A stretch of DNA of 64,000 nucleotides from Monocercomonoides exilis PA203 (GCA_001643675.2 LSRY02000045.1:372001-436000); one strand, 5' to 3'; shown: positions 1 to 61,286, numbered from the stretch's first letter. Program-made: numbers and translations. The notes: generated from the letters alone by a model not told the origin.

Positions 1-3000
1 AATTTCACTCCTTTCACCCTCAATGTTCCTCCGCTTCCAACTGATATCATCATCCCTCCCCCTTTCATTCCACTTCCACCTGTGCATCTTGATGAAAAAT
101 TGCTTTCTTCAATTTTCACATTCCCATTATCCCCCATCCCAACATTCAAACATCCCCCTCCTCCATTTCCACCTGCAACTTCCACCTCCACTCCACTCAC
201 TCTGCTGTTCTTCAATTCCAATTGAACTCCACTTGTCATCGTTATTGGAGATTTCCCATTCGTCTTCAATGAACTTTCCATCACAAATCCATCAACAATC
301 AGATTCCCTCCTGCCATGCCAATGATGCTGTATCCGATCTTTCCATTGGTCAATGCCCCACTCTCAAATGAGACTGAACAGTTCGTCATACTGAGTGTTG
401 ATGTTGAATGGATGAATGCACTTCTCCTTGATTTCAACTGACCTTTCACAACAAATGAAAGTCGGCTCATTGTCACTGAACTCGAACATCCAACAAGCCA
501 ATCTTGTGTGGCTGATCCTCCATCACTCACATTCACCCCCATCCTCTCTCCATCGGATAACGCTATTCTGCCTGAAATTATCACACCAAATGATGATGGT
601 CCTGTTATTTCCTTGGCAATTGAAGAAGATGAGACAATTTCAATTTCATTCACAGTGCTGCTCATTCTTGAGTTCGCACAATAATCAACTGTCAAACACC
701 TGAATCCATCAAATCCACAATGACTGTGGTCCTTCCCATTTCCTCCACTCCCATCAACAAGCACTTTTGACCCCATTGTGCACAAATACACAAACAGTGG
801 AATCACACCATTTTCTTCCCCATTTTCGCATCCACTCAATTTCAACACATCTGATGGAATGGTGCTTGCGTCAAAAAATGCAAATGAGCTGGCATTCACT
901 TTTGAATCCAAAAACACTCCACTCCCACAACGAACAAACACATCCTTTCCATATGTTGCAACATTCCCATTCACTTTCGAAAACTTCACATCCTGCCCAA
1001 TTGTCAATCCACATCCTCCACTCTCCATCAACACAAACATCCCTCCTCCTCTCCCTCCATTCCCTCCATTATTCTCTGCCTTATTCCCATCAATCACACT
1101 CGTTCCACTCACAACCACTTTTCCGCTTCCCTTCAATCCAACATAGATTCCTCCTCCTTTTCCACCACCACAACTGCACCCATTCACATTGCATCCTTCA
1201 ACTGTCAACGTTCCACTCGACCCAACTGTTCCTTTCATCCATCCTCCATCTCCCTCATTCCTTTTGATTCCGCTGATATTGCATCCTGAACATATCACAC
1301 TCGTCATTCCTTCAGAAAATTCAATCGCTGAATGAGCTCCAAACACAAGTGCTCCACCAATCACAAATCGTTCCATTTTCAGACTCCCACCCTGCGCATT
1401 CACAATGCTGTATCCAAAGGCCACACTCGATGTGCTCTCTGATATATGAGCAACTGAGCAGTCTGTGAGTGTGAGTGATGAGCTTGTCAAAACAATGAGC
1501 GATGTTGCACTTGACAACAGAAATGGAATTTGGAATGCAATGTTCTTTATTGAGCTTGCACTCTGAACATTTATCAAACACGAAGATGTCATTCCACTCG
1601 GCACCCTCACATTCACATTTGTCTTGTTAATCCCACAATACACCTCCCATTCATATGACCCGGCCATCGACACAACCTCTCCCAGCTCAAACCCTGAATC
1701 CAACACAATGTTCTTCTTTGACGAACTGAATCTGTTCTGTGAAGCAAACGCGATCGTTTTGCATGGAAAATACCCAAACCCACAAAACCACGAGTCATAT
1801 CCTCCATACCCATTCACCTTATTCCCCACATGTGCTGCTCCTGAAAATGTGTCAAAAAACACATTCAATGGGAATATTCCCATCCCTCCCTCATTCCGAT
1901 CATATCCCATCAACTCATCATAAATAGATCCATTGTGTCCAACATTCAGCTTTGTGGTTGTTATTGTCCCACTCACCAGCCTGCTCCCATTCACAAACAC
2001 ATCTTTCCCTCCCAATGTTGCACTGCAACCAATAAAACTCACTGATGTTATTGTAAAATCGAATGAGCTATCTGCCAGCCATAGCATCACCCCTCCTCCA
2101 TATCCACTGCACTTCGTTTTGTTGAATTTTGTTGTTCCTCCGCTGTGCGATGCTGATGATCCAATTCTAACTTGACTTGAAGAAGACGCCAACTCAACCT
2201 TTATCCCTCCTCCATTCCCATTCACACACTCACATCCTTCTATTGTTGTATTCCACACCACAAATGTCTCCCCACCCTTCACGCTTTTTGCCATCACCAC
2301 TCCATCCCCTGTTGTCCGATTCACATTCCGAATTGTAACATTACCCAGCAAACTCTCTCCTGATGATGATCCGGCTGATGATGGTTCAGCGAAAAGAGGC
2401 TGACTCATTTTTATATTTTTGATCTCAATATCAATCATCTTCAGCTGATTCAGCGCAACATCTAACACAGATGCTGATATAACACTTCCTCCAGTTGTAC
2501 CTGAGATCACCACATCCTCCAGTGAAAGAGTCCCGCTCCCCAGTGACACCACAAACACACTCGGCGATGGGCTTCTTGTCGCGTTGTGGTCGATCCCCAC
2601 ATGCCCCACCTCCAGTTGACCAGATGATATGCTAAACAACGTTGTCGAAGAGGTCGAAAGCGCACTCGTCCCAATCACACTCACTGTCTTCCCTCTCCCA
2701 ACAACAGAAATCTCCTTTTCCCCAACATTGATCGTCGCCCCTTCGCTCACATGCCTTCCACTCAGCACTGTGATTGTCGAGCTCAACTGCGCCATGCTCG
2801 AACTCACTGCATGCCCCACTGTCTTGCACGGTGTTGCCTCACTCATCCCACACAGATTGTTTGCGTCGTTCCCACCCACTCCAACAAATCTATCCTTCAT
2901 CCCTTCCTTCAACCATTCCTTTTTTTCTGTATGCTGATAACCATTATAATAATAGCACACTCTCTTATCATTGCTATTCGTTGTATACGATTCATAGAAC

Positions 3001-4583
3001 GGGTTGTATGACGAAAAGAGATTGTTAGCATCTCGAAAATACACATCGTGCCCATATGGAGTGGAATTACTGCAACTGCAATCATGGAAGAAGAAGAAAT
3101 AGCAATAAAGGTTGTTGCTTGGAGGTGTTGACTGATATGGCCTGAAATCCAATCCTCCGCCATATGACACTGCTGAACACGAAATGAACTGGAGGCTCCT
3201 CATTTTGAATGCAGCTGGAACATATGAGCAATACATCCCTCCGCCACTTGAACCTGTAAGAGAACACGAAGTGAATGAGCACTCAAACACACAAGCACTC
3301 TCTCCATTGCCGTTTTCTGTTCCAATACAATTGGATCCAGAAACATTAAAAGATACAAGATAAAGTCCTCCTCCATAACCACTTACTTTGCATTTCTGGA
3401 ACTCGCACCCACTGATCCTGACACATGACGAAATTGATAGAGCATATATCCCTCCTCCATAATTATTTTTTGCAGTACAAGCATTGAATGAGTTGTTCTC
3501 AATCTTGATGGAATTAATTGTATGACACATAATTCCTCCTCCTCGACTGTATGCAGTACAGTCGTTGAACGAACAAAATTTCACTGAAAGTGTTCCCGAT
3601 GCCTTGTTGTACATGTTAATAGCACCTCCACTCGATATTCCATCTGAATAAGAACTACTTGTTCCAGTTGTATTTGAGCCATTCCATACACACCAAGTGA
3701 ACGAATTCGTTAAATCTGTAGAAATTTGCTGTCTCACTGGTTTCGATGGATTCCCTTCACTCCCGCTGACTGCAACATTCTGAGACCGATAGCACCTGAC
3801 AAATGAGGTGTTCGAGGCAGCCAAGGATGATGAGGGGCTGTTCAGCGAGGGGACAATGCCCCCATCATACACATCCCACACTGACACAAATTCACATCCA
3901 CTCATCAGAAATGATGTTTGGCCCAGCCCTTCACCCAGATGTGTTGTTTTCGATGGATTTGTGGAGATGTTGAAGAAGGTCAGCTGGGTGAGAGATACAA
4001 GGCGTGTCAATGGAGGTGCCAGAAACGGGGCTGAAGACACACAAAAAGATGAGAAATCTGACTCACTCACCAATACACTCCCTCCTCCTTCACTTTCTTC
4101 TTCGCTTTCTTCTTCTCTTCCTTCTCCACCTCTTCTTCCTTCACCACCTCCTCGTTGTTCTCCTCTCTCTCCTACTTCATCTCTTCCGCTTCCTCTTCCC
4201 CATCCTCCTCCTCCTCTTCCCCCACCTTCTCTCTCACTCCTCGTCTGCCCCATCCTCCCCTCTCCTCCAAACAGCCTTCCAGAGTATATTTCTCCCCCTC
4301 TTCTCCACCCTTTCAATGTGATGTTTGTCAACACCCCAATGCTCCCACTCAGATCAAATGCCCCTGCACCATCATCCTTCCCCATCCCCACAACACACCC
4401 CCTCACCACAACCACGCTCCCTTTCCTTCCACACACCAAACAACAATTATCATCATTCTCCAATGATATTTGATTTAACTCAACTGATGCATTTTTAACC
4501 ACTAAACTCCCTTTAAACACACTCACATCACTTACTGCTTTAACACATGACGCGATTCCCACAATAAACAACAAACTCAACAT
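1..4583 (-). CDS. Large secreted/surface right-handed beta-helix (Pmp/pectin-lyase-fold-like) protein, copy A; 3' end beyond window
   Basis: ATG at 4583 reads MLSLLFIVGIASCVKA (signal-peptide-like). The frame is absent from the ORF track, consistent with no stop before the window edge (>1520 aa). Manual translation of ~4100-2350 gives repeated GG[AG][ILM]Y..F..C units and CGMSEATPCKT, colinear with ORFs 37938-39707 and 45296-47524. Confidence 0.88.
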   Translation of the reverse strand, partial: MLSLLFIVGIASCVKAVSDVSVFKGSLVVKNASVELNQISLENDDNCCLVCGRKGSVVVVRGCVVGMGKDDGAGAFDLSGSIGVLTNITLKGWRRGGEIYSGRLFGGEGRMGQTRSEREGGGRGGGGWGRGSGRDEVGERGEQRGGGEGRRGGEGREEESEEESEGGGSVLVSESDFSSFCVSSAPFLAPPLTRLVSLTQLTFFNISTNPSKTTHLGEGLGQTSFLMSGCEFVSVWDVYDGGIVPSLNSPSSSLAASNTSFVRCYRSQNVAVSGSEGNPSKPVRQQISTDLTNSFTWCVWNGSNTTGTSSSYSDGISSGGAINMYNKASGTLSVKFCSFNDCTAYSRGGGIMCHTINSIKIENNSFNACTAKNNYGGGIYALSISSCVRISGCEFQKCKVSGYGGGLYLVSFNVSGSNCIGTENGNGESACVFECSFTSCSLTGSSGGGMYCSYVPAAFKMRSLQFISCSAVSYGGGLDFRPYQSTPPSNNLYCYFFFFHDCSCSNSTPYGHDVYFRDANNLFSSYNPFYESYTTNSNDKRVCYYYNGYQHTEKKEWLKEGMKDRFVGVGGNDANNLCGMSEATPCKTVGHAVSSSMAQLSSTITVLSGRHVSEGATINVGEKEISVVGRGKTVSVIGTSALSTSSTTLFSISSGQLEVGHVGIDHNATRSPSPSVFVVSLGSGTLSLEDVVISGTTGGSVISASVLDVALNQLKMIDIEIKNIKMSQPLFAEPSSAGSSSGESLLGNVTIRNVNRTTGDGVVMAKSVKGGETFVVWNTTIEGCECVNGNGGGIKVELASSSSQVRIGSSASHSGGTTKFNKTKCSGYGGGVMLWLADSSFDFTITSVSFIGCSATLGGKDVFVNGSRLVSGTITTTKLNVGHNGSIYDELMGYDRNEGGMGIFPLNVFFDTFSGAAHVGNKVNGYGGYDSWFCGFGYFPCKTIAFASQNRFSSSKKNIVLDSGFELGEVVSMAGSYEWEVYCGINKTNVNVRVPSGMTSSCLINVQSASSIKNIAFQIPFLLSSATSLIVLTSSSLTLTDCSVAHISESTSSVAFGYSIVNAQGGSLKMERFVIGGALVFGAHSAIEFSEGMTSVICSGCNISGIKRNEGDGGWMKGTVGSSGTLTVEGCNVNGCSCGGGKGGGIYVGLKGSGKVVVSGTSVIDGNKAENNGGNGGRGGGMFVLMESGGCGLTIGQDVKFSKVNGNVATYGKDVFVRCGSGVFLDSKVNASSFAFFDASTIPSDVLKLSGCENGEENGVIPLFVYLCTMGSKVLVDGSGGNGKDHSHCGFDGFRCLTVDYCANSRMSSTVNEIEIVSSSSIAKEITGPSSFGVIISGRIALSDGERMGVNVSDGGSATQDWLVGCSSSVTMSRLSFVVKGQLKSRRSAFIHSTSTLSMTNCSVSFESGALTNGKIGYSIIGMAGGNLIVDGFVMESSLKTNGKSPITMTSGVQLELKNSRVSGVEVEVAGGNGGGGCLNVGMGDNGNVKIEESNFSSRCTGGSGMKGGGMMISVGSGGTLRVKGVK

Positions 4584-4869
4584 CTCGTCAAATTTGTGTC
4601 AACCTCGCCAAATAAATATCTTTATAATATAATTGATCATTTTTGATCAATTTTACCATCGATTTATTTCTATTTTTCCTTTCATTAACTTATCTTTTAT
4701 ATTTAAATTTCATTTTATTTTTCATTTTCCTTTAAAAATTACTTCCATACTTAAGTATGAAATTGCTGGATTTATACCCCGTGCCACCTGCCAATCCAAC
4801 ACAAAGAGAACAGTGGAAGGTAATTTTCAACCACCTTCCCCCCCCAATGTTCCCCCCCCATGAGAAATT

Positions 4870-6287
4870 GGTTTCACACTTAAATATTATCTTTTAATAT
4901 TTCTCATTTTTCATAAATTAATAAAATCATTTTCGAAATACAAATTATATAGATCACATTATTTGATCTTCACATAAAAAAACATTTCACTCAAAATTAT
5001 AATATCAAAATAATTTTATCATAATAACGTTAACAATAATTTATAACCTGAAACAAAAATTTCAATTTAATGTTAAAATAAATAAAAAAACATTCAAATT
5101 TCAATAAATTTACAATTATAAACTAATTACCCTAATAATCATTCAACTCATTCACTTTTTAATACACTCTCTCAAATAAAATTAACACAACAAAAATTCA
5201 TATCTTTCATACACATAATCAAATCAACTTTTAAACATTCAATAATTTCCTCATCCTTTAACATATATCAATTTCTCTTTATAATCAATATTAATCCTTT
5301 TTTAATCTTCCATACCTATTAATAATCAACATTTAATTTATATTAATTTCTTTCTTCCTCATTTTATACCACTTTAATCATCCTTTTCTTCAATTTCAAA
5401 CATTTCTAATTACTCATCACACTTATTATTAATCACCTTTTCTTCAAATAAATATCTTCATTTCTTATCAAAACTTCTCATCTTCTCATCATTACTATCA
5501 TTCCCCTTTTCATTCTTATCAAATTCTCTTTCTAAATCAAATATTTATCATCCATCCCAAAACATAATTATTATCATGTTTCTATTATGGATTTGAAATG
5601 TGTTTAAAACTCATCCCACTTTCTCATTTCTGTTCTTTTCATATTTCTTTCCTTTCACTTCTTCTTCTAATATCATCATCTTTCCAATATTATCTTAATG
5701 TCTTCATCTTTTAATTTAATATCTTCATCCCCTTTTCCATCTTCCATTCGTCATATTCTCCATATTTCTTTTCCCACAAATAATATATCATCAATAATAC
5801 ATTTAAAATGTCAAATTTTAATAACATTTTCAAACATACCTTTAATTATCATTCAAACTTCTTCACTTCATTCCAATCTTTATGTAAATTCATTAACTTT
5901 CTTTTTCTTCAACACTTCATATTTCATTCCTATTTAACTTTCTTCATATCATCACTTTTATTTCTATACACAAATTTAAATTAAACAATAAAAAATACAT
6001 CATCAATATATTTATTTCGTTTTCCTTTAAAAATTTTAAAAAAATTAACAAACCTCCTTTATATACTAATATTACATTAATTCATCATTCAAATATCAAC
6101 CTACTCACGCTCTTTAAAACTTTATATTTCAAAATATACAAAATATTCATCCATTACAATAATCGCTTCCAATGCTGCTAAAAATAAACAAATAATAATA
6201 AATCATTATCAAAACACATAAAATACATCATCATACTTTTATTTAACTCAACTTTATTTCATATTCAACAAAATCTCAAATCACAAT
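4870..6287. other. Strand-asymmetric G-depleted tract (C-depleted on minus strand), non-repetitive
   Basis: No G at all on + strand from 5073 to 5577 although C is abundant; mostly 0-3 G per 60 nt over the rest. Confidence 0.9.
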
Positions 6288-6466
6288 TGGGGTGAAATTT
6301 TTGCAATTGTGAAAAAAACTGAGATTAGTTCCAAACTTTTTCTGCATTCTTTTCATAATTATTTAAACATTTTCATTGGGAAAAAAAGTTCAAATATTAT
6401 CCAGCTTGGAAAAATCTTTGAAAGCTTGAATGTAACAAAATTCATAAAGCAAAAAATTTCGTCCCA
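6288..6466 (-). mobile_element. ~180-bp MITE (TGGG...CCCA family 1)
   Basis: Imperfect TIR TGGGGTGAAATTTTTGC / GCAAAAAATTTCGTCCCA; reverse-complement homolog at 27326-27506; flanked by AT/AT. Confidence 0.75.
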
Positions 6467-6822
6467 ATTCATCTTTGCCAATATTAATTTTCAAATAATG
6501 GATTTCATATTTCTTCTTAAATTTTTCTTTTTTTCCAAACTTAATCTCTCAATCAACACATTTTTTCCTTTTCATTAACTTTTTGCACATTTATTTTTTG
6601 AACCTAACAACGAACCCTCCAAATGACAATGGCTCAAAAAGCATCTTTGTTCCGATATTTCTTCATTTTCACTAATACCTCCATCTGAACATTGTTTTTC
6701 ATAGAATTTCACAACTCTATAACTTTTTTAATAAAAACATTCAAATCATCATCTCCCTTTCTTTCTCTTTTCTTCCATTTCTTTTGCTTTCTCTCCCCTT
6801 CAAACCCTTCGCACTCTTTCTC

Positions 6823-9800
6823 CTATTCTTCTTGTATTATATCGCCATTATACTTCCATCCAATATTTGGAACTTCCATTATTCCCTTAATTGCACTTTG
6901 CTCTTCTTTTTCTATTTCTCCTTTCAGCACGCTCTTTTCTCCTTTAACTCTTTTATCGATTTCTTTATCTCCTTTTGTTTGAAGACTGCTTTTGTTCTTC
7001 ATGACGAAACTCTCTGTTGAAGATGCTGTTTCATCTCCAAATAAAATAGACACAGATATTTCTGTTTCTTCTTCGTCCCATTCAGATAATGACAGGTCAA
7101 TTTCGTAACAAATTTCAGTCTCGTTGATATAATCCTCTTTGCTAAACTCCTTCAAAACTTCTTTTTCATCTCCTCTTTTGAATATTATTTACATCGACAG
7201 ATTGCAAGGCATCAAAAGTTGTCCCAAGCATGTTATTTTCATCACATTTCCCTCTTTCGTTGTCTTCACTTCTTCAATAATGGGGATAAAGAAAGGAGAT
7301 GATACTTCAGAAATAATTCCTTTTAAGAGCGCAACCTTCGCTCAACATCCAAAATGAGGCGTTATCCTTCATTCCATCTCCTCCTTTCACGCTCTTCACA
7401 TTCAACGTGCTTCCATCTGAACACAAAATGTTGCGTCGAAGAGAAGGATAGCCGGAAACAAATGGATTGTTGTTCTGAAACATCCCCAGTTCTATCGTAA
7501 CAGTCGAGTTAGACAGAGAAATCGCTCCTTGGGAGAAGTTCTCAAATAAAGTGTTGCTTATATTCACTGTGCTTTCTACAAAGTTGATTGAAGAGCTGCT
7601 CCATTCCCACACAAAACCAGTTTCTTCGCCAGTTTCTTCGTTTTCATTCACTTTTGAATGAATATTCCGTCCATTTTGGCTTCTCGTTTCTGCAACACCA
7701 CAAAATGAGCTCTTTTCTATTGAAACACTTCCACACGAGGTCAAATCCAAATAGCTTCCTCTTTCGCGCTGCCCGCTGATGTTGCTGAACACACACGAGT
7801 CAATCAGAATGCGGCTGTTCCAACTGGCTGCCTTCACAGCTGCTCCTTCCGAATGCTTCAGCTGCACATCCCTCACTTCACACAGAACCAACTCAAACGG
7901 CGTATCGCCACTTTCATCGGCTGCCTTGTAAAATTCAGAATTTAACTCAAAATTATCCGATTCTTCATTGAAAAGAGAAGAAAGAGAAGAAGAAGAAGAA
8001 AGAGGAGGAGGCAGAAGAGCAAACAAGCATCCTTCTTCCACAGTCACTTGGCTGATAGAAACTTCTCTCAGCACAAAAGATGCTGCCATTTCGGCGGCAA
8101 AGGCAGACGAGTGCGAAGAGAGCGAAGAGACGTTGCACCGCTTCACTTCCACTTTGCACCCGCTTTCTGCAGACAGCACACCGCAGCACTCGAAAACATG
8201 CTCTATGCAAATGTCTGCCAGCACAGCCACGCTGCCGCCAGACACAGAAATGAGAGAGTTCGCAGATGACTCGAAGGAATTGGGAGATTGAGAAGAAGAA
8301 GAAGATGATGATGAAGATGAAGATGATGAAGAATCGGAAGATGTTATGAAAGAAACAGAACAATCTTCTATTCTCAGTCCGCTGGCTGTCAGAGACGACG
8401 ACTCGCACTTGATGACATGAGCCGACTGCGAGGCATCGCCCGACACGACAAATAAAGATAGCTCTTTGAAGCAGACACCAATCAACTCCACAGCAGCACC
8501 AAAGCAGGCCTCAATGAACGAATTCCCTGCTTCTGGCTCAAATGAAGACAACGAAGAAGAAGAAGAAGAAGAAGAAGACTGAGCAAATTGCTTTGCTCCA
8601 AATGTTTCTGCTGATGGCTGCTGCCTCGATGCCTGCAAGCGGATGGCCGAGAACGAAACATTGCTCAAACACAAACAATGACTCTCAACACAAATTACAG
8701 TATTTGCCAGCTGCGCCGGCTCTTCTGACGTGATTGTGCAGTCGCCCAGCGTCAGATTTCCGCTCCTCACGCCAAAGACAGAGCGATGCGCAGAAGCGAA
8801 GCTGGGGCCGAAGACGATGTCCATCCCCAAAATGCTGCACTCCTCAGACGAAGACACCACACAATCCGCACTTCCATCCGTCCGAGCGATTTCGGAGTTG
8901 AACTCAAAAACAGCTGGGCTGCCTCCGACTGTCTGCACTGTCGCTGATGAAATGGCTGTCTCTGCTGAAACAGCTGCCTTCTTCACCACCAGCACGTTCT
9001 GGTACGGCTCGTCGTTCAGATGCCGCACAGCCTCGCTGAGTGTCTCACACGGGTCTTCCCTTCGCCCACAGTCCTTCTCGTTCTTCCCTTTCTCTCCCGA
9101 CACAAATATCCGCTCTGACTTGTAGAACACAATAAATGGCACCAAATCAATCGGCTCCTTCTTCACTTTGTCCATCCCGAAGATCGCATTTTCTCTGTCA
9201 AAGGCCAACTCGCTGAAGTCCATCACAAACAGCGCCTCATTGATCTGCTCAGCAATCGATCGGCAGACAATGTAAAGATCCTTCGCCACACTCGCTCTGT
9301 TCAAAGAAAACCGAATCAGCCGAAATTTGATTGGCAGCGCCTTCGCTTTCTCCGAAGACTGTGCATCTGAATCTTCTGGATCGTCCAGGCAGCTCAATGC
9401 AATTGCGCCTCCTCTGCCTTCACTCGTTGAGCACGCACATGTCACAAAAGACGACAGATTCGCCAGCACACTGCCTTCATTTGCCCAGCTGTCAGCCAGC
9501 CCGCCCGCCTTCTCCTTCATCCACACACAAAACGCCCCTCCCAGCTGAGACTCGCTGTTGCAGTCGCTGAATGTCGAGTTGTCCATCGTCAGCGCCACAG
9601 ACAGTGCACTCTCATAAGAAATGATCGATGCCTTCGCACTTGTGCTGCGGATGAGATGCCACTGAAGATTCCCCAGTCTGATTTCGCTCGCTTCTTTGCC
9701 CGCTTTCGTTTCTTTGCCATTCCCTGATAAGACTGATTCCTCATCCCCCTTCTCTTCTGCATCGCCCACAGAAATAAACGATCCTTCTGCAAAATTCAGA

Positions 9801-12170
9801 ACATCAACAGAAAACGCACTTGCCACAAAATGTGCAGCCGGCGCAGCAAGTCGGATGGCCGATGTCGCAAAGGAGAGCTCGGCCATTTTGGATTCTTCAA
9901 TCGAAAGTTTCCCAGACGAAACATGGAAAAGCACAAAAGCAACACCTTCTTCTGCTGTCTGCATCGCAAAGGAGCATTTGCTAAGCGTGGCTGTTCCTGT
10001 CTCAGTGAAAAGAAGTTCCTTTTGCGATGTTTCGAAAGACGAAGGCAGGCAGAAGTTGATGGAGGTGAATGCGAGCACAAGCTTGTTTGTGAGCACAGCC
10101 TCAGAAGGCTCAGAAAGAGATTGAATAGCTTTTCCCACATTGATTGTGCATTCATCTGACGAAGGCTCATCAGAAGAAGAGGAGGAAGAAGAATAGCCAG
10201 GAGAAGAAGGAACAGCTGGGCTTATTGAGCTGTTTGAAAGGTCCCACTCGTCTGAAATGGCAGCACTTGTGTTGATTTTGATTTCTCTGAACTGAGTTCC
10301 TTCTCTGAAATGCCTCATCCCTTCCCAAAACGACAGACAAGGCTCCTTTTCTGACCCGCACCCATGGATGTCTCTTCCACTCGACGACACAACAACAGAA
10401 GTGTCTGTGTGCTCAAACAGCAGCTTGTCCAAAGATATGCCTTCTGTAAAGTTCACTTTGTCTGCCCCAAAGAAAGCATTTGTGTTTTTCCATTCAGTCC
10501 AATCAAACATCAACCTTCCAATGACAACTGAAGAATTCAAATCGGAGCTCAATATGAACACGTTTCTTCCAACAAATGCTTCATTCTCAGAAAACACCAA
10601 ATCAGACAAAGAAAATCCATCGATCGAGTTGCAGCAGCTCAGATACAAAAACCCTCCTTTTCCGACAAAAGTCGAGCAAGTGCAATGGCAAACAGAACTG
10701 AACTGCTCAGAATTTTCTCCCTTCAGACAGAAGCTTCCTTCTGTTCCAAGTTCAATTTTCATTCCTCCACCTTCCTCACTCAACGCAGATGTCAATTCAT
10801 CCAAAGAGCAGTTCACAATTGACAGATGCGTCTCAAGCTGAACAGACCCAAACGAAGGCTGCTCGTCATACTCACTCACATGGAGAGAAGTGAATTCACA
10901 GTTCTTGAAGCTTATTTCAGATGGCTGAGATTCTTGATTGGCCGAAGAGGAATAATCATCTTTTGTATCTGTTGTTGAATGAATCAGATCGAAAAGTGAG
11001 CAAGCTGAAAATGATAAATGTGTAAAGTGAACTCCCTCAAATGAAGCTTGGGCTGCTTGCGAAATCACAAAAGGCGTGACAGAAAATGAGGCAGAATCAG
11101 CATGGCACAGAGAAAGCTGCACAACTGCACCCAAAACGCTGATCAAATGCACGCAACTTGAAAAATCTTGCGATTCTGAAGAAGTGAGAACGAAAGAACA
11201 CGATGAAAATTGGATGTTTCCTGTTTCTGTCGAAGAGGAAAACAACGAAGCACCTTCAGGTGTCTCAACAGCAAAAACAGAAGGAATATGAAAATCGATC
11301 GAAGAAAACGAAAGAGCGGCTGTGGATGAAACAACACTCCCAGATGCAAACTGAACATTGGTGCTGATGTTAATACCGCTGTTTTCTTTGCTAAATGACA
11401 CAACATTGACTGAGTTGAGTGAAATGTCATTTTCGATCGAGCCATTCGATTTCACAGTGATTACTCGAAGTGGCACATCAGCACTGCTCTCTGTAAGTCG
11501 ATTGACAGAATAGTCAAGCGATTGGCACGGAACATATTTGTTCCCACAAAACACCTCGTTCTGCCCTGCTGGCGCCTCAACCAGAACAGACGCACTCACA
11601 AAACCTTCCACAAAAATCATCAGATCAACCGCCTCGCTGAAATAGCTCCTATCAAACCCAACCAGCGCATTCGTTTTGTCCTCAAATTGTGTTGCAAATG
11701 CAAACAACTCAGAATTCACTCCCTTCCTCAGGTCATTCGCCACAACAAACATGTCTCTTCCCTGGTGTGCCTTGTTTCCTCCAACACTTATCTCTGAAAA
11801 TGAATATCGGTCATTGTTGTCTGTTGCACATGTCAAATAGATTCCTCTCCCGCATCCTACATGACTGCCACAGATGCTGTTCGTTTCAACCACATTTACG
11901 TCTTCAACTGCTATTTCTCCAATTTCAGCTCAAAAAACATCGCTCCATCCTTTTTAATCCTTCTGATTTTATTATTTGGAAAGAGCATACAACAACTTCT
12001 ATTTCGTAGCTGTTCTGAAGAGGATACATCTATCTACACATATTTAATCATTCTTTGATGAACCTTTTGAATGAAGAGGAGTTCAACAGAAGAACAGCTG
12101 ATGATGAGTCTTCTCCTTCTTTCCCTCCTTCTTCTTTTTCTCCTTCATTTTTTTCCATTTCAACTTCTCA
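6823..12170 (-). pseudogene. Beta-helix surface receptor family member, 5'-decayed, frameshifted near 7320; 1528-aa open core at 7307-11893
   Basis: Repeated CGx4PC, GGx(I/L)YL, FxxNxA units and family motif NNNP..GYPSLRRNILC...VKGGDG..NASFW. Homology to the 17692-19335 protein continues in another frame (LLMPCNLS, VSILFG) with a stop. Region 11893-12170 is coding-like but contains stops; no signal peptide. Confidence 0.75.
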
Positions 12171-12182: not shown

Positions 12183-15100
12183 AATGATTTTGCAATTAAA
12201 TATTCTTCCTCCCCATGTGTGCTAATAACAGACAAATCGACTGTAACAATGGATTCCTGCATTTCCCACCAAAAATCGGAATCTCCGTTTCTTTTGCAAA
12301 GTGGGGCAATCTGTTTCACAAATATGAGTTTGATCCCCCAAAAGAATCTTTGCCCTTCCAGCCTCATTTTTTCATCTGATGATTCAAATTCTATTATTTT
12401 GAGAAATTCCATCGTTGCAGATCTGGCTGTTTCGTCATCAGACTATTTCTTGTTGTCTGGAAAGAACAAAATGGAACAGATTGATAATTGTGCTTTCAGG
12501 AACATGTCAGTGAAATATGACAAGGATAGTGATTACCAAATGGAGCATTCATGCTGCTTGAGTTCAATGGAGAACAGCCTCATTTATTTATGTGTGAATG
12601 CATTTGAAGGAGGGATTTCGAGAGGATCGTATTCTTCACAAGAATTTGTCTGCAAAAACACAACAATAAACTTCGGGAAAAGAGAAACGAATGCTCTTGA
12701 GAAAAAAGAAAAACTGAACACAACAGAAAGTCAATCCTTTTCGTTGTGTGAATGGGAAGATTGCACATCCCTCCATGGAGGCGCTATTTATGTTTATAAC
12801 AATGCAAGTGCAATTCTCACAGTTGAGAATTCTTCATTCACAAGATGCAGTGCTTCTTCGACAAATGGTGGAGGAATATATGCTCAAAGAATAGCTGAAT
12901 GCATTGTGCTCCATACCATATTTGTCCAATGTTCTGCGGAAGCAACAAATAATCATGGGGGAGGCGGAATCATGATCGAAAACATCTGTGTTCAACCAAT
13001 GGTTGACGATTGCTATTTTCAAAACTGTTCATCTGGTAATGATGGAGGGGCAGTTGATCTCCGTCAAACAAATTCTCAAAGGGAAAAGAGATGCATTATC
13101 GATTCATTATTTGTCTCTTGCAATGCAAATCATTCAACCTCATCCGATGGAGGTGCAATTCAACATTGGACTTCCATTGACAAAGCAATCATTTCAAATT
13201 GTTTGTTCCGTAATTGTCATTCCATGTGTGGAGGAGGCGCTGTTGGCATATTAATTATTAGCAACAATATGCAACATTGTTTTATTTCTGCTTTTTCCAC
13301 AACAATACATGCAAAAAAGGTGGGAATGATATTGTTCTTTTTGAATCAACATCAAACAACATTGATTCCTCGTGCTTTTCAACAAGGAATACAACAAATA
13401 GAGTTAGCATAGATGTATATGTAGTGATTGATCAAAGTGTATGGCTTCGAAACGATTTTAGAATAATGAGATTTGTTTCATCTACCGAAACACAACCTTA
13501 TGCAACTGATACAATTAGCTTGTGGACTGAATGAAATTCATCCTTGTGGGACTATCAGGCATTGCTTGACTCAGCTTATTCCTGATATTTTCACAGATAT
13601 TGAGATACTCACAGGAACGATCACAAAAACCAAGAAAGTGGATTGTGGAATTAACACTTTTACTGTTTATGGCCAAAGTGATATGAGCACAGCAATCCAA
13701 ACCGAATTTGAAGCATCTGGGCTGTCTCTTTTTTTCTGTCTCAGCAGGCTCATTAACTGTAATTGTCCTTTCACTTGTGCATGATCCAACACACTCAAAT
13801 AATCGTGGGTCAAGGCTGTTTGAGATAAGTGGAGCAGGAGAAATACATATTAGCAGATTGAACATATCCACAGGAAGCACACAATCAACAGAGACAGCAT
13901 TTTTCACAGAACTGATAAATATTCAGAATGGTGTGCTACAGATGGAAAATGTGAACTGGGCAAAGACGATTTCCACAAATTCATTGTTTTCGATTTTTTC
14001 AACAAATGAAATTTCATTGATTCTTTCCGAGTGTGCCTTTGATGGGATTGAGAGAACAACAAGCCGAGCAGCTGTGATCTCGTTTTCTAATGAAAATGGA
14101 AACATTGATCTGAATTCGAGCACTTTTGAAGGATGTGGAAGCAGAACATCGGCTGATGGGGGATCGATGATGCTGTGTGTTGGGTATGGAAATGAAGTGA
14201 AAGTGAAATGTGGATCTTTTGATGGGTGCTATTGCTCTGCAACATATGGATTTGGGGGAGGAATCTTTCTTCAATTATTGAATGAAAACCCCAATTTCCT
14301 GATCTCTTCTTCCTTTGGGACAAATACAGCCAAGCGGGGAAAAGATATTTTTGTCATTTCACCCAATTTGGAAGTGATCGCAAAGTCACAAAAAATCACA
14401 AGCGTGATAGCCTCTTTGGATTCTTTTGATAAGGTGCAAGGATATAACAATGTAAACAACAGTGTGGCTATTCCTCTGTGCATCTATCTCCTTCACACAC
14501 CGGAAGAAATATATGTGAGTAATACTTAAGCATCCAATCACTCACTCTGTGGAATTGTCCAATTTCCTTGTTTAACAATAAAGTACTCACTCTCACGATT
14601 AGCAAGAGAAAAGAAAATTATTGTGAATGGAATGATTATGATGAGTGATGAATTGGCATTTGCTGAACAGAAACTTGAAATCCGAGGAATCAATGATCAG
14701 AGTGGTTGGACAATCTCCGACGAAAGTGAAACATCCAATTCATCGATGATAACAGCAAATGTTGAAACGATTCTATCAAAACTCATCTTCTCTCTTCCAT
14801 CTTCCCTTCCTCTTCACTCCACTTTCATTTCGTCTTCTTCATCATCAATGACTTTATCTCATTGTTCTCTTTCTCTTCAAAATCCTTTATCTGAATTGGT
14901 ATTTCTGTTTTTATCCGTTGAGTCTGGAACCTTGTATATTGATTCGTTTTCTGCTTCATCGATTGATTTGAGTGGATATCCATTGATCTCGTTGCCTGGA
15001 AGTGGAACAAATACAGAGTTTATGAATACTCCCTGGCTGAACATGACAAACAGCAATTTCACAGAAATCAAAAGAACAGCTGGAAGTGGAGGCTGCGTGA

Positions 15101-37937: not shown

Positions 37938-39707
37938 TTAAAAAAAAAGAAGTGACGTTGGCAAATCGAACTGCTTATTTGGGTTGAAGGAAAAAAAGTT
38001 GGCTGATTTGTTCTTTATTCTCTTCTCAGCAAAATTTCCCAAAAATAATAATACCTGAAAATATTTGCCTTTCATTTGCATCTCCACCTTCTTTTTCTCA
38101 TTTTCCTCAATTATCATCATCTTCTTTTCCCCAACACTGATTGTTGAATTTTCGCTCACATGCCTCCCACTCAGCACTGTGATTGTCGAGCTCAGCTGCG
38201 CAATGCTCGACCCCACTGCATGCCCCACTGTCTTGCACGGTGCTGCCTCACTCATCCCACACAGATTGCTCGAATCATTCCCACTCACCCCAACATACCG
38301 ATCCTTCATCCCTTCCTTCAGCCAATCCTTCTTTTCTGTATGCTGATATGCTCCATTTACCCAATAGCACACTCTCGTATCATCACTATTCGTTGTGTAC
38401 GATTCATAGAACGGGTTATTCGAAGAAAAGTGATTGTAATAATCTTCAAAATACACATCGTGGCCATACGGAGTGGAAGTTGTTGTACATCTGCAATCAT
38501 GGAAGAAGAAGAAATAGCAATAAAGCTTGTTGCTTGGAGGTGTTGATTGAGATGGCCTGAAATCCAATCCTCCGCCAACTGACACCGCTGTGCACGAAAT
38601 GAACTGGAGGCTCCTCATTTTGAAAGCAGATGGGACACCATAACAATACATCCCTCCGCCATATTGACTTGTTAGAGAACACGAGGTGAAGAAACATTCA
38701 AACACACAAGCACTCTCTCCTTTGCCGCTTTCTGTTCCAATACAGGAAGATCCAGAAACATTAAAAGTATGAAGATAAAGCCCTCCTCCATAATTAACTG
38801 CTTTGCATTTTTGAAATTCGCAACCACTGATCCTGACACATGTTGAAATGGAATAGGCATACATTCCTCCTCCAGCACTATTTTTTGCAGTACATGCATT
38901 GAACGAATTGTTCTCAATCTTGATGGAATTTATTGAAACGCAAAAAATTCCTCCACCATAAGCATATGCATAGCAGTCATTGAACGAACAAAATTTCACT
39001 GAAAGTGTCCCAGCTGCCAGATTATACATATTAATTGCACCTCCATTCGAAGCCCTATCAGCCGTAGAAGATGACGTTCCAGTTGTATTTGATCCATTCC
39101 ACACACACCAAGTGAACGAATTCGTCCCATTGTCTGTAATCTGCTGTCTCGCTGGTTTCGATGGATTCCCCTCGCTCCCGCTGACTGCAACATTCTGAGA
39201 GCGATAGCACCTGACAAAAGAGGCGTTCGAGGCATCCAGGGAAGATGAAGGGCTGTTCAGCGAGGGGACAATGCCCCCATCATACACATCCCACACCGAT
39301 GAAAATGAGCACCCACTCATCAGAAATGATGTTTGGCTCGGCCCTTCACCCAGATGTGTTGTTTTCGATGGATTTGTGGAGATGTTGAAGAAGGTCAGTT
39401 TGGAAAGAGATACAAGGGGTGCCAGGGGAGGTGCCAGAAACGGGGCTGATGAAACACAAAAAGATGAGAAACCAGACTCACTCACCAGAACACTCCCTCC
39501 TCCTTCGCTTTCTTCTTCTCTTTTTTCTTCTCTTCTTTCACTTCCTCTTCCTCCACCTCTCTTTCCTCCGCTCTCTCCTCCTTCATCTCTTCCTCTTCCT
39601 CCTCCACCTTCTCTCTCGCTCCTCATCTGCTCCATCCCTCTCAATAAAATATTTCTCAAAACCCCAAAAATCATGCAACCCCTTTCCCTCCTCTTTCTGC
39701 TGCTCAT
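37938..39707 (-). CDS. Truncated open-frame paralog of copy A (copy B): variable beta-helix head only
   Basis: 589-aa ORF highly similar to A and C. No signal peptide; homology ends abruptly at ~38119 (TISVGEKK). Confidence 0.8.
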   Translation of the reverse strand: MSSRKRRERGCMIFGVLRNILLRGMEQMRSEREGGGGRGRDEGGESGGKRGGGRGSERREEKREEESEGGGSVLVSESGFSSFCVSSAPFLAPPLAPLVSLSKLTFFNISTNPSKTTHLGEGPSQTSFLMSGCSFSSVWDVYDGGIVPSLNSPSSSLDASNASFVRCYRSQNVAVSGSEGNPSKPARQQITDNGTNSFTWCVWNGSNTTGTSSSTADRASNGGAINMYNLAAGTLSVKFCSFNDCYAYAYGGGIFCVSINSIKIENNSFNACTAKNSAGGGMYAYSISTCVRISGCEFQKCKAVNYGGGLYLHTFNVSGSSCIGTESGKGESACVFECFFTSCSLTSQYGGGMYCYGVPSAFKMRSLQFISCTAVSVGGGLDFRPSQSTPPSNKLYCYFFFFHDCRCTTTSTPYGHDVYFEDYYNHFSSNNPFYESYTTNSDDTRVCYWVNGAYQHTEKKDWLKEGMKDRYVGVSGNDSSNLCGMSEAAPCKTVGHAVGSSIAQLSSTITVLSGRHVSENSTISVGEKKMMIIEENEKKKVEMQMKGKYFQVLLFLGNFAEKRIKNKSANFFSFNPNKQFDLPTSLLFF

Positions 39708-45295: not shown

Positions 45296-47524
45296 ATGAG
45301 ATATTTTTTTGTGAGGGAGTCATTGAACCCGTCGGTTGAGTTAAATCAAATTTTATTGGAGAATTATGATAATTGTTGTTCAGTGTGTGGAATGAGGGGG
45401 AGTGTGGTTGTGGTGAGGGGATGTGGTGTGGAGATGGGGAGAGGCAAGGAGGCAGGGGTGTTTGAGCTGGGCGGGTGCAGAGGGGTGTTTTGGAACATCA
45501 CGCTGAGAGGGGTTGGAAGTGGAGGAAATGTGTGTGGGAGACTGTTTGGGGGAGAGGGGAGGATGGGGCAGAAGATGAGTGAGAGAGAAGGTGGGGGAGG
45601 AAGAGGAAGAGTCGGATGGGGAAGAGGAGGAGGTAGAGGTAAAGGAGGAGAGAGAGGAGGACAAGGAGGAGGCGGAGGAAGAAGAGGTGGAGAAGGAAGA
45701 GAAGAAGGAAGAGAAGAAGAAAGCGGAGGAGGAGGGAGTGTATTGGTGAGTGGGTCGGATTTCTCATCTTTTTGTGTGTCTTCAGCCCCGTTTCTGGCGC
45801 CTCCCCTGACACGCCTTGTATCTCTTTCCAAACTGACCTTCTTCAACATCTCCACAAATCCATCGAAAACAACACATCTGGGTGAAGGGCCGAGCCAAAC
45901 ATCATTTCTGATGAGTGGGTGCTCATTTTCATCGGTGTGGGATGTGTATGATGGGGGCATTGTACCCTCACTGAACAGCCCCTCATCATCCTTGTCTGCC
46001 TCAAATACCTCATTTACCAGGTGCTATCGCTCTCAGAATGTTGAAGTCAATGGGAGTGAGGGGAATCCATCGAAACCAGCGAGACAGCAGATAACAGACA
46101 ATGGGGCAAATTCGTTCACCTGGTGTGTGTGGAATGGCTCAAATACAACTGGAACGTCATCTTCTACGGCTGATAGGGCTTCGAATGGAGGTGCAATTAA
46201 TATGTATAATCTGGCAGCTGGGACACTTTCAGTGAAATTTTGTTCGTTCAATGACTGCTATGCATATGCTTATGGTGGAGGAATTTTTTGCGTTTCAATA
46301 AATTCCATCAAGATTGAGAACAATTCGTTCAATGCATGTACCGCAAAAAATGATTACGGAGGAGGAATGTATGCCAGATCTATTTCGTCATGTGTCAGGA
46401 TTAGCGGTTGCGAGTTCCAGAAATGCAAAGCAAGTGGTGCTGGAGGAGGGCTTTATCTTTATACTTTTAATGTTTCTGAAACTGCCTGTATTGGAACAGA
46501 AAATGGGAAAGGCGAGAGCGCTTGTGTGTTTGAGTGCTCATTCACTTCGTGTTCTCTAACAAGTCAATATGGCGGAGGGATGTTTTGTCAAAATGTTCCA
46601 GCTGCATTCAAAATGAGGAGTCTCCAATTTATTTCGTGCTCAGCAGTGTCAGTTGGTGGAGGATTGGATTTCAGGCCATATCAATCAACAGCTCCAGGCA
46701 ACAACATTTATTGCTATTTCTTCTTCTTCCATGATTGTAGATGCACAACAACTTCCACTCCATATGGCCACGATGTGTATTTTGAAGATCGATACAATCT
46801 CTTTTCATCGAACAACCCATTCTATGAATCGTACACAACGAACAGCAATGATAAGAGAGTGTACTACCAATATTATAACGGAAACAATTGGGTGTATCAG
46901 GAAACACAAAAGAAGGGCTGGCTGAAGGAGGGGATGAAAGATAGATATGTTGGGGTGAGTGGAAATGATGCGAGCAATCTGTGTGGGATGAGTGAGGCAG
47001 CACCGTGCAAGACAGTGGGGCATGCAGTGGGGTCGAGCATGGCACAGCTGAGCTCGACAATCACTTTGCTGGGTGGGAGGCATGTGAGCGAAGAGAAGAC
47101 GATCAGTGTTGGGGAAAAGAAGATTTCTGTTTTGGGGAGAGGGAAGGCAGTGAGTGTGATTGGAACAAGTGCGCTTTCGACCTCTTCGACAACGCTGTTC
47201 AGCATATCATCTGGCCAACTGGAGGTGGGGCATGTGGGGATCGATCACAACGCGACAAGAAGCCCATCGCCGAGTGTGTTTGTGGTGTCACTGGGGAGCG
47301 GGATTCTTTTGCTGGAGGATGTTTTGATCGACTCTTCGAAATCAGGAGGGAGTGTTATATCAGCATCTGTGTTTGAAGTGGCACCGAGGCAGCTGAAGAC
47401 GATTGATGTGGAGATAAAAAATATGAAAGTGAGCCAACTTCTGATAATCGAGCCATCATCAGCAGGACAACATTGGGAGAATATTATTTGTTGTTTATTT
47501 TATTTTGAGTTCATGGCACACTGA
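45296..47524 (+). CDS. Truncated open-frame paralog of copy A (copy C)
   Basis: 742-aa ORF; homology to A starts at SVELNQI (after A's signal peptide) and ends abruptly at ~47467 (EPSSAG). Confidence 0.82.
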   Translation: MRYFFVRESLNPSVELNQILLENYDNCCSVCGMRGSVVVVRGCGVEMGRGKEAGVFELGGCRGVFWNITLRGVGSGGNVCGRLFGGEGRMGQKMSEREGGGGRGRVGWGRGGGRGKGGERGGQGGGGGRRGGEGREEGREEESGGGGSVLVSGSDFSSFCVSSAPFLAPPLTRLVSLSKLTFFNISTNPSKTTHLGEGPSQTSFLMSGCSFSSVWDVYDGGIVPSLNSPSSSLSASNTSFTRCYRSQNVEVNGSEGNPSKPARQQITDNGANSFTWCVWNGSNTTGTSSSTADRASNGGAINMYNLAAGTLSVKFCSFNDCYAYAYGGGIFCVSINSIKIENNSFNACTAKNDYGGGMYARSISSCVRISGCEFQKCKASGAGGGLYLYTFNVSETACIGTENGKGESACVFECSFTSCSLTSQYGGGMFCQNVPAAFKMRSLQFISCSAVSVGGGLDFRPYQSTAPGNNIYCYFFFFHDCRCTTTSTPYGHDVYFEDRYNLFSSNNPFYESYTTNSNDKRVYYQYYNGNNWVYQETQKKGWLKEGMKDRYVGVSGNDASNLCGMSEAAPCKTVGHAVGSSMAQLSSTITLLGGRHVSEEKTISVGEKKISVLGRGKAVSVIGTSALSTSSTTLFSISSGQLEVGHVGIDHNATRSPSPSVFVVSLGSGILLLEDVLIDSSKSGGSVISASVFEVAPRQLKTIDVEIKNMKVSQLLIIEPSSAGQHWENIICCLFYFEFMAH

Positions 47525-60933: not shown

Positions 60934-60975
<42 letters not shown>

Positions 60976-61255
60976 TGAGAGTGAGAGTGAGTGAGTGAGT
61001 GAGTGAGTGAGTGAGTGAGTGAGTGAGTGAGTGAGTGAGTGAGTGAGTGAGTGAGTGAGTGAGTGAGTGAGTGAGTGAGTGAGTGAGTGAGTGAGTGAGT
61101 GAGAGTGAGTGAGTGAGTGAGTGAGTGAGTGAGTGAGTGAGTGAGTGAGTGAGTGAGTGAGTGAGTGAGTGAGTGAGTGAGTGAGTGAGTGAGTGAGTGA
61201 GTGAGTGAGTGAGTGAGTGAGTGAGTGAGTGAGTGAGTGAGTGAGTGAGTGAAAG

Positions 61256-61286
<31 letters not shown>

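What the first reader, a model, noticed from the sequence alone, without database searches (positions are those of the whole stretch)
2920..3760. Antibody/VLR-like pattern: fixed framework with Tyr-rich hypervariable patches on each beta-helix rung
Seen, aligning A/B/C: DC[TAYSR/YAYAY/YAYAY]GGGI[MCHT/FCVS/FCVS]INS; KN[NY/SA/DY]GGG.YA[L/Y/R]SIS; KCK[VSGY/AVNY/ASGA]GGGLYL[VS/HT/YT]FNV; SLT[GSS/SQY/SQY]GGGM[YCSY/YCYG/FCQN]VP; VYF[RDAN/EDYY/EDRY]N. Intervening strands (INSIKIENNSFNACTAKN, CVRISGCEFQKCK, FKMRSLQFISC, YCYFFFFHDC) are invariant. Variation sits at the same register just before and after every GGG turn and is rich in Tyr/Ser/Gly. Inference: these positions stack on one face to form a diversifying ligand-binding surface.
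Basis: partly seen in the sequence, partly recalled or inferred. Interest (0 to 1): 0.8.

Follow-up and report, generated by a model that had tools for sequence, protein, structure and literature searches.

The report
Tyrosine-rich variable ridge on receptor heads
The outermost beta-helix domain of a giant surface-receptor family of the gut protist Monocercomonoides exilis varies at the same few tyrosine-rich positions beside every glycine turn. This looks like an inherited, recombining repertoire of binding sites, but selection for change is suggested rather than proven.

Summary
Window 2920-3760 lies on the minus strand in the N-terminal "head" of a giant gene (ORF 3-4583, 1882 aa) of Monocercomonoides exilis. 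All quoted A/B/C strings are present. Variation is locked to registers -3..-1 and +4, +6, +7 around each GGG (p = 2e-4).

These positions are 24% Tyr, 17% Ser and 14% Asn, against about 5% Tyr elsewhere and under neutrality. The head is a right-handed beta-helix (AF2; Z 21), and its nearest structural neighbours carry Pmp repeats.

dN/dS at the patches is about 0.8-1.1 by independent pairs, against 0.25 for the framework. Site models give w about 1.8-2.2 for 3-5% of sites, but recombination weakens that test. I had no coordinates, so "one face" rests on register only.

Head diversity is old: dS is 0.47 in the head versus 0.05 in the stalk. It is reshuffled in 75-150-nt conversion tracts, mostly shared with truncated head copies such as B and C. 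I found no sign of somatic or targeted mutation.

This scan has reported the same ridge and the truncated-head archives before, on other DNA of this genome. Published papers list the family only as "tyrosine kinases".

The parts
3..4583 (-). Gene A: the part of the giant receptor-like ORF that lies in the window (1882 aa in all; the stop lies beyond the window start at C42:370935)
   Evidence: Six-frame translation and ORF list. Family hits named Monocercomonoides exilis, 2000-3100 aa, many with a C-terminal PF07714 match.
4536..4583 (-). Predicted signal peptide of gene A (first 16 residues or so: a hydrophobic stretch followed by a small-residue cleavage-like site)
   Evidence: Read from the translation. 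Inference only; no signal-peptide predictor was run.
4089..4301 (-). Gly/Arg/Glu-rich low-complexity linker (A residues about 95-165). Its antisense strand gives the spurious 221-aa ORF at 3808-4473(+).
2901..3800 (-). Head core (A residues 262-561 = head numbering 1-300): six beta-helix rungs plus a C-terminal cap. This is the unit compared across 90 paralogs.
   Evidence: AF2 pLDDT 85-96 over most of the rung region, lower at the insertion loop (model residues about 160-390).
3153..3629 (-). The six Gly turns: GGA at 3621-3629, GGG at 3534-3542, 3450-3458, 3366-3374, 3237-3245 and 3153-3161. The hypervariable codons sit at -3..-1 and +4, +6, +7 of each.
   Evidence: Motif positions. Entropy and dN/dS by register.
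3024..3035 (-). Residues 256 and 258 are among the fastest sites.
38109..39491 (-). Copy B: a head copy truncated at both ends (homologous to A residues about 116-636). It sits in a 602-aa open frame with no signal peptide.
45758..47467 (+). Copy C: a truncated head copy (homology to A ends near residue 738-746). It sits in a 750-aa open frame, inverted relative to B. It shares a tract of about 200 nt identical to B.

Best explanation
The stretch encodes the membrane-distal beta-helix 'head' of a giant single-pass surface receptor of Monocercomonoides exilis. The layout of complete family members is: signal peptide, head, chain of beta-helix modules, one membrane span, kinase-remnant tail. Each 28-residue rung follows a Pmp-like grammar, GG[AG][ILVM]-x14-18-F-x-x-C. 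The inward-pointing residues are fixed. The exposed residues just before the Gly turn (end of loop T3) and just after it (start of strand PB1 and turn T1) are free to differ. Stacked over six rungs plus the cap, these residues form a Tyr/Ser/Asn-rich stripe that most likely is the ligand-binding surface, and each of the 131 or more heads carries its own version. The diversity is inherited, not made in the cell. It is old, and it is maintained against the gene conversion that homogenises the stalk. It is recombined in tracts of roughly one rung, exchanged among full-length genes and many truncated head-only copies such as B and C. Shown: the register-locked variation, the composition, the fold class, neutral-or-faster amino-acid change on a constrained framework, and the mosaic structure. 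Inferred: that the stripe binds ligands (bacterial or host surface molecules are the obvious candidates for a bacterivorous gut flagellate) and that selection favours difference.
For: Family and architecture: M. exilis proteins of 2000-3100 aa; signal peptide, one TM segment at about 1860-2690, C-terminal PF07714 match. Fold: AF2 mean pLDDT 75 overall and 85-96 across most of the rung region; Z 19-21 to right-handed beta-helix proteins; the nearest Atlas models after its own Preaxostyla cluster mostly carry PF02415. Register-locked variability in 90 heads. There are 42-75 distinct six-residue patch versions per rung, and 85 of 86 rung combinations are unique. Composition: Y 24, S 17, N 14% against a neutral expectation of Y 5, L 13, I 7.5%. 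Rates: framework w 0.25; patches 0.83-1.03 by 28 independent sister pairs. pS at registers -1 and +6 is 0.24-0.26 against 0.315 overall, so there is no mutational hot spot. Site models: M1a vs M2a LRT 268 (5% of sites at w 2.2), still 48 with eight segment trees (3% at w 1.8; sites 149, 184, 192 and 256 among them). The head is the least conserved part within a 2300-aa subfamily. For A versus its close paralog L015, dS is 0.47-0.50 in the head and 0.05-0.07 in the stalk. Mosaicism. By the published Pmp map, GGA ends T3 and starts PB1, and most variability lies in T3 and T1 (PMC11166332).
Against: The recombination-robust estimate of dN/dS at the patches does not exceed 1; the confidence intervals span 1. 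The site-model signal shrinks five-fold once recombination is partly absorbed, and it rests on fixed FastTree trees and a grid approximation. Variable T3/T1 loops are generic in Pmp-type beta-helices. No coordinates were available, so surface clustering and exposure were not measured. No expression data could be obtained, and no ligand is known. Gene A's own link to a membrane span and tail is only suggested by homology 4-7 kb downstream.
Confidence: 0.55

Rival explanations
1. Relaxed constraint only. The residues beside each Gly turn are loop positions that the fold does not care about. They drift at the neutral rate and carry no paralog-specific function. Tyr/Ser/Asn richness reflects general needs of an exposed beta-helix edge, such as aromatic or Asn stacking, solubility or glycosylation.
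For: Patch dN/dS is 0.8-1.1, indistinguishable from 1. Pmp proteins also vary mainly in T3 and T1 (PMC11166332). The site-model LRT drops from 268 to 48 with segment trees.
Against: Truly unconstrained sites should approach the neutral composition (Leu 13, Ile 7.5, Arg 6.7, Tyr 5%). The observed values are Tyr 24, Leu 1.5 and Ile 1.5%. Many changes are therefore rejected, yet the overall rate still equals the silent rate. A class with w of about 1.8 survives segment trees. The head keeps old divergence while the stalk is homogenised, and nearly every head carries a unique combination.
Confidence: 0.25
2. Antigenic variation rather than ligand recognition. The head is the exposed tip seen by host antibodies. 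The patches vary to escape them, and the truncated start-less copies serve as a silent donor archive, as in VSG, vlsE or MSG systems.
For: About 70 of the 131 scored heads lie in open frames under 1000 aa, many of them in inverted pairs. Breakpoints recur at A residues 628, 636, 661, 721 and 746. The truncated copies stay open and show framework w of about 0.3-0.4. Gene A is a patchwork of 0-difference tracts that match different truncated copies.
Against: There are at least about sixty long genes, and representative complete members each have their own membrane span and conserved tail. That fits a parallel receptor repertoire better than one-at-a-time expression. Four recently duplicated arm pairs show zero patch changes. 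No expression or switching data exist. The organism is a lumen commensal grown in xenic culture (PMC12308965).
Confidence: 0.1
3. Assembly or polishing artefact. Mosaic tracts and patch differences arise from mis-polishing of a highly repeated family in a nanopore assembly.
For: The assembly is ONT-based, and the family overlaps 'unclassified repeats' (PMC8767320).
Against: Errors would not respect codon structure. The framework shows w 0.25, frames of 430-4400 aa are intact, and variation is locked to the rung register. Independent protein records from the earlier 454-based annotation show the same family.
Confidence: 0.03

Closest known systems
Chlamydial polymorphic membrane protein (Pmp) repeat beta-helices (PF02415) and the Pmp-like adhesin-type proteins of bacteria and archaea
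   Same: Both are right-handed beta-helices whose rungs begin with GGA/GGG plus a hydrophobic residue, followed 14-18 residues later by a conserved Phe motif. Conserved residues point inward, and variability is concentrated in the T3 and T1 turns (PMC11166332). The nearest predicted structures in the ESM Atlas mostly carry PF02415, with TM 0.5-0.6.
   Different: No HMM match: 1 of 76 heads at E = 0.064, none for A. The Phe motif is F-x-x-C, not FxxN: 0 strict Pmp patterns and 6 with Cys. It is a eukaryotic type I membrane protein with a kinase-remnant tail, not an autotransporter. It is amplified to hundreds of paralogs that recombine.
Plant LRR receptor-like proteins/kinases and NLRs (e.g. 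Cf-9/Cf-4, Xa21, RPP8 clusters)
   Same: Both are germline multigene families. A solenoid scaffold carries hypervariable solvent-exposed positions at a fixed repeat register. Diversity is maintained and reshuffled by unequal exchange and gene conversion among clustered paralogs, including truncated ones. (My own knowledge; RPP8 gene conversion in PMC6771003, listed but not read.)
   Different: The scaffold is a beta-helix, not an LRR. The tail is only the C-lobe of a kinase. dN/dS above 1 is well documented in plants and only suggestive here.
Lamprey variable lymphocyte receptors and antibody CDRs
   Same: Fixed framework plus short variable patches rich in Tyr/Ser/Asn. Many donor-like partial copies lie in both orientations near complete genes.
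   Different: The fold is neither LRR nor Ig. The variation is inherited and old. No evidence of somatic assembly, a dedicated deaminase or RAG-type machinery, or clonal expression; not testable here.
The published 'protein tyrosine kinase' family of M. exilis (332 genes, the largest family in the genome)
   Same: It is the same gene family: hits are annotated MONOS_ proteins carrying PF07714/PF00069. It is described as the largest family and as overlapping unclassified repeats (PMC6759080; PMC8767320).
   Different: The text searches of those two papers turned up only the counting of the kinase-like tail, and nothing on the ectodomain, the head, its variable ridge or the truncated copies. A further search found no paper pairing Monocercomonoides with beta-helix or hypervariable terms among the 12 top-ranked of 987 hits.

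Membership tests
Right-handed parallel beta-helix (pectate-lyase-like) fold | Stacked rungs of about 22-30 residues forming parallel sheets; structural match to solved members | tested here: met
   AF2 pLDDT 85-96 over most of the rung region with periodic strands. VIA-align Z 19-21, 250-290 residues aligned at rmsd 3-4 A to AlgG, tailspikes, PL6 lyases and PfbA. Foldseek hits are weak, but all are beta-helices.
Chlamydia_PMP repeat family (PF02415) | Significant match to the family HMM | tested here: not met
   No hit for A at E <= 0.1. Only 1 of 76 heads hits, at E = 0.064, far below the curated cut-off.
Chlamydia_PMP repeat family (PF02415) | Alternating GGA(I,L,V) and FxxN tetrapeptides spaced 14-18 residues apart (PMC11166332) | tested here: not met
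   The strict pattern occurs 0 times in A. The variant GG[AG][ILVM]-x14-18-F-x-x-C occurs 6 times, 4 of them in the head. The rung grammar is therefore alike, but the defining Asn is replaced by Cys.
Variable lymphocyte receptor (VLR) | Leucine-rich-repeat solenoid | tested here: not met
   The fold is a beta-helix and there is no LRR Pfam hit.
Variable lymphocyte receptor (VLR) / Ig gene conversion systems | Somatic assembly or conversion of one expressed gene from flanking cassettes | not testable with these tools
The genome shows only germline mosaics.
Receptor protein kinase (TKL/TK group) | Complete catalytic domain (Gly loop, VAIK Lys, HRD, DFG) | tested here: not met
   In family members P0009, P0023 and P0053 the Pfam match covers profile positions 159-257 of 258 only. 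The P0009 tail has none of GxGxxG, VAIK, HRD or DFG; only APE is present. Gene A's own tail was not examined beyond tblastn homology.
Type I single-pass surface receptor | N-terminal signal peptide, one membrane span, cytoplasmic tail | tested here: met
   For full-length members P0009, P0023, P0053, P0006 and P0008: one hydrophobic segment at about 1850-2725 and a hydrophobic N-terminus. For gene A: a signal-peptide-like start. A tail-like sequence lies downstream, but its continuity with A is unproven.
Sites under diversifying selection | dN/dS significantly above 1 at the variable sites | tested here: inconclusive
   Pairs: 0.83-1.03 with confidence intervals spanning 1. By register: -1 gives 1.39/1.07 and +6 gives 1.38/0.99. 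Site models: LRT 268, falling to 48 with segment trees, w2 1.8-2.2 for 3-5% of sites. FEL-like test: 24 sites at p < 0.05.

The most novel reading that the evidence does not exclude
The heads are a combinatorial, paratope-like recognition repertoire built on a beta-helix. The hundreds of open but start-less head copies are a working donor archive, from which rung-sized patches are copied into complete receptor genes often enough (possibly within a culture's lifetime) to act as an anticipatory diversification system. That would be a third scaffold, after Ig and LRR, for such a system, and it would be in a unicellular eukaryote.
Probability: 0.08. Interest if true: 0.9.

Novelty: new variant of a known kind. 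Interest (0 to 1): 0.6.

Why it matters
M. exilis is the model eukaryote without mitochondria, and its largest gene family has been described only as 'tyrosine kinases'. The family's outer tip turns out to carry a register-locked, tyrosine-rich variable stripe on a beta-helix, with old diversity kept apart from the homogenised stalk and reshuffled rung by rung. That gives a concrete, testable idea of what these hundreds of genes do: recognise many different surface molecules, for example of gut bacteria. It also adds a new scaffold to the short list of solenoid proteins used for large inherited recognition repertoires. The exact residues to mutate or swap in binding experiments are now identified.

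Tried and rejected
1. Bacterial ORF reading. The ORF listing missed the gene because it runs off the window. A six-frame translation with the standard code resolved this, and no alternative genetic code is needed.

2. Pfam on A, B, C and 76 heads, and a PDB sequence-profile search, gave nothing useful.

3. Foldseek against PDB gave only weak hits. VIA-align and the Atlas were needed.

4. A PHI test for recombination on all 86 unique heads was not significant (p = 0.13). The likely reason is that multi-state sites are saturated. Run-length tests and window painting showed clear mosaics.

5. Mutual information between rung patch versions was uninformative, because almost every version is unique.

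6. Mutational hot spot or DGR-like adenine mutagenesis: rejected. The synonymous rate at the patches is not raised. Lys, Glu and Gln are among the commonest residues at several hot positions (e.g. 140, 149, 256), which codons ending in a pyrimidine cannot encode. Identical palindrome arms show no patch changes.

8. Model coordinates are not exposed by the tools, so solvent exposure and spatial clustering could not be computed.

9. The large representative-protein search was not run. No claim here rests on the absence of relatives.
Full report
**What is at the coordinates**

The window is eukaryotic DNA, with short ORFs, strong composition swings and the standard genetic code. Window 2920-3760 is coding on the minus strand. 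It lies in a frame that is open from 4598 to the window start.

With 2 kb more sequence from the same contig (G000:C42), the ORF is 1882 aa. It starts at window 4583 with a signal-peptide-like sequence. A Gly/Arg/Glu-rich linker follows, and then the region in question.

A word search with residues 170-640 returned 129 proteins. All but one of the 120 listed are named records of Monocercomonoides exilis and are mostly 2000-3100 aa; the exception is a weak Streblomastix strix hit. Many carry PF07714/PF00069 at the C-terminus. The genome size (82.3 Mb, 101 contigs) matches the published ONT assembly (PMC8767320).

Representative full-length members have a hydrophobic N-terminus and one membrane span at about residue 1850-2725. 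Their C-terminal match covers only the C-lobe of the kinase profile (positions 159-257 of 258). The P0009 tail has no Gly loop, VAIK, HRD or DFG. The family is therefore a set of giant single-pass surface proteins with a kinase-remnant tail. The finding lies in their membrane-distal first domain, which I call the head.

Gene A's ORF stops at C42:370935. A cluster representative for this locus continues past that stop in another frame, and a span-plus-tail-like segment lies 4-7 kb further on. I did not establish whether A is continuous with that segment.

**Check of the observation**

The three copies are A (2400-4583, minus), B (37941-39746, minus) and C (45272-47521, plus), 85-90% identical in DNA.

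- Among A/B/C, 24 of the 29 bracketed positions vary, against 42 of the 252 other positions in the span (p = 9e-13).
- The own-genome search scored 131 heads at 63-86% identity out of 1891 candidates. I aligned 90 of them.
- Entropy by register around the six Gly turns (head residues 58, 87, 115, 143, 186, 214) peaks at -3, -2, -1, +4, +6 and +7. It is near zero at the glycines and low at +3, +5 and +8.
- This register lock is beaten by only 1 in 5000 random rung shifts.
- At those registers Tyr is 24%, Ser 17% and Asn 14%. Tyr is 4.7% elsewhere and 5.1% expected from base composition. Leu and Ile, common under neutrality, are 1.5% each. Gly is not enriched.

**Fold and rung anatomy**

An AF2 model built on 76 aligned heads has mean pLDDT 75. 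Block means are 85-96 over most of model residues about 160-390, dipping to 72-81 at the insertion loop, and the strand pattern has a regular period.

VIA-align gives Z 19-21 over 250-290 residues to right-handed parallel beta-helix proteins such as AlgG, phage tailspikes, PL6 lyases and the adhesin PfbA. In the ESM Atlas the nearest models, after the protein's own Preaxostyla cluster, mostly carry the Chlamydia_PMP repeat (TM 0.5-0.6). A feature search points the same way.

By sequence the head is an orphan. There is no Pfam hit in any of the 76 heads and no PDB profile hit.

The rung grammar is GG[AG][ILVM]-x14-18-F-x-x-C. It occurs six times in A, while the strict Pmp form with Asn occurs zero times. 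In Pmps, the GGA motif ends turn T3 and starts strand PB1, the Phe motif marks PB3 to T3, the conserved side chains point inward, and most variability is in T3 and T1 (PMC11166332).

By that map, the variable positions here are the end of T3 (-3..-1) and the outward residues of PB1/T1 (+4, +6, +7), on either side of one corner. In stacked rungs they necessarily line up along the axis.

I could not obtain coordinates, so exposure and contiguity are inferred, not measured. From my own knowledge, the PB1 face flanked by T3 and T1 is where many beta-helix enzymes and tailspikes hold their ligands.

**Selection**

| Test | Result |
|---|---|
| By register (28 pairs) | peaks at -1 (1.39 against its own pS, 1.07 against global pS) and +6 (1.38 / 0.99); -2 and +7 about 0.9 |
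| Silent divergence at -1 and +6 | 0.24-0.26 vs 0.315 overall, so no mutational hot spot |
| Pairs split by age | 0.75-1.1 throughout, confidence intervals spanning 1 |
| Grid codon model, single tree, M1a vs M2a | LRT 268; 5% of sites at w 2.2 |
| Three-class version | 16% of sites at w 1.5; LRT 119 |
| Eight segment trees | lnL improves by about 6600 units; LRT falls to 48 (3% at w 1.8; sites 11, 67, 149, 157, 184, 192, 256) |

The heads recombine (next section), so the single-tree results are suspect. The drop in LRT with segment trees shows this.

My reading is that the patch positions change at the silent rate or somewhat faster, on a framework held at w 0.1-0.25. The composition shows that many replacements are not tolerated. 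A neutral-like overall rate therefore suggests that the tolerated changes are favoured. That step is an inference, not a demonstration of w above 1.

**How the diversity is made and kept**

Within a 2300-aa subfamily the head is the least conserved part: 0.54-0.72 pairwise identity, against 0.67-0.89 in the stalk and 0.77-0.91 across the conserved part of the tail.

Between A and its close paralog L015, dS is 0.47-0.50 in the head and 0.05-0.07 in the stalk. The head is therefore an old divergence island inside a recently homogenised gene.

The heads are mosaics:

- 55 of 3654 pairs share significantly long identical runs of polymorphic sites.
- Painting A in 75-nt windows gives successive 0-difference tracts of 75-150 nt matching different copies: L016, L014/L026, L002, L020/L052 and L015, with a 1-difference tract matching L048. 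Where the match is to a single copy (L016), the next-best copy differs at 7-9 sites; in some other tracts a second copy is nearly as close.
- B and C share a 200-nt identical tract.
- In young pairs, silent and replacement differences are clustered together in tracts.
- The four identical palindrome-arm pairs show no patch change.

New heads therefore arise mainly by importing old rung-sized pieces, not by targeted mutation.

Each rung has 42-75 distinct six-residue patch versions among the 86 unique heads, and 85 of the 86 combinations are unique.

**The partners B and C**

About 70 of the 131 scored heads lie in open frames under 1000 aa. Many are on contig C42 and in inverted pairs. Their homology to A ends at recurrent points (A residues 628, 636, 661, 721, 746). 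They are interspersed with full-length genes in the head tree.

They remain open, and short-short sister pairs show whole-head dN/dS of about 0.3-0.4. They are not decaying debris. Either they are translated, or exchange with working genes keeps them in shape. B and C are of this kind, and neither has a signal peptide.

**Comparison with what is known**

The family is published only as the largest 'protein tyrosine kinase' family of M. exilis and as overlapping unclassified repeats (PMC6759080; PMC8767320). Term searches within those two papers, and a further literature search, turned up no paper describing the ectodomain, the head or its variable stripe.

- In rung grammar and shape the head is closest to Pmp-type beta-helices, but it fails the HMM test and the FxxN test.
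- In logic it is closest to plant LRR receptor and NLR clusters: a germline repertoire, hypervariable exposed repeat positions, and exchange among clustered and truncated paralogs.
- The antibody/VLR comparison holds for composition and layout only.

**Earlier notes of this scan**

After my own analysis was well advanced, I found that this scan has reported related findings on other DNA of this genome:

- the same ridge (s1-464089);
- the truncated-head archives (s1-466201, s1-471060, s1-468324);
- the old variable patch in homogenised genes (s1-468397, s1-471119);
- the dead half-kinase tail (s1-464117).

My results agree with them. The half-kinase note made me check the tail and drop the term 'receptor kinase'.

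**Limits**

- No coordinates, no expression data and no ligand.
- The codon models are home-built approximations on FastTree trees.
- Only 90 of at least 131 heads were analysed, all at or above 63% identity to A.

**Verdict**

This is a real and statistically robust feature. It is a new variant of a known kind of system, a diversified germline receptor repertoire, built on an unusual scaffold. The binding-surface reading is the best one (confidence 0.55), and diversifying selection is suggested but not proven.

Noticed in passing
window 3808-4473 (+): A 221-aa Pro/Ser/Leu-rich ORF on the plus strand is the antisense shadow of gene A's Gly/Arg/Glu-rich linker. It is almost certainly not a gene.
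   Followed up: partly
L091:935-1200 and L092:3245-9999 (G000:C42:363245-371200): Gene A's ORF stops at C42:370935. A cluster representative (P0001, 3123 aa) continues 100% identical in another frame from about L091:953. A membrane-span plus kinase-remnant-like segment (74% and 57% identical to the P0009 tail) lies at L092:6218-3245. This could be an intron, a frameshift, or separate pieces of one receptor gene.
   Followed up: partly
window 7310-11929 (-) and 12183-19332 (+): Further giant open frames (up to 1540 aa) are 21-28% identical to the stalk modules of the same family. The window therefore holds other family members besides A, B and C.
   Followed up: no
window 1-8000: GC skew is strongly negative on the plus strand (-0.23 to -0.71). 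The sense strand of gene A and its upstream region is therefore G-rich and C-poor. Another reader flagged a G-free stretch at 4870-6287.
   Followed up: no
G000:C42, about 3.6-605 kb (also C80 1.79-1.96 Mb, C71, C53): Truncated head copies come in inverted pairs with identical scores, for example C42:483010(+)/487882(-) and 589543(+)/593479(-). Four such pairs are identical over the whole head.
   Followed up: partly
window 60823-61300: A long array with an 8-nt period (49 overlapping copies reported) encodes Ser/Leu-rich low-complexity frames.
   Followed up: no
head residues 142, 113, 222 (window 3375-3377, 3462-3464, 3135-3137): At the hottest positions the alternatives to Tyr are mostly Asn, Asp, Ser, His, Cys and Phe, the single-step neighbours of the Tyr codon. 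This suggests Tyr is the recurrent ground state.
   Followed up: no
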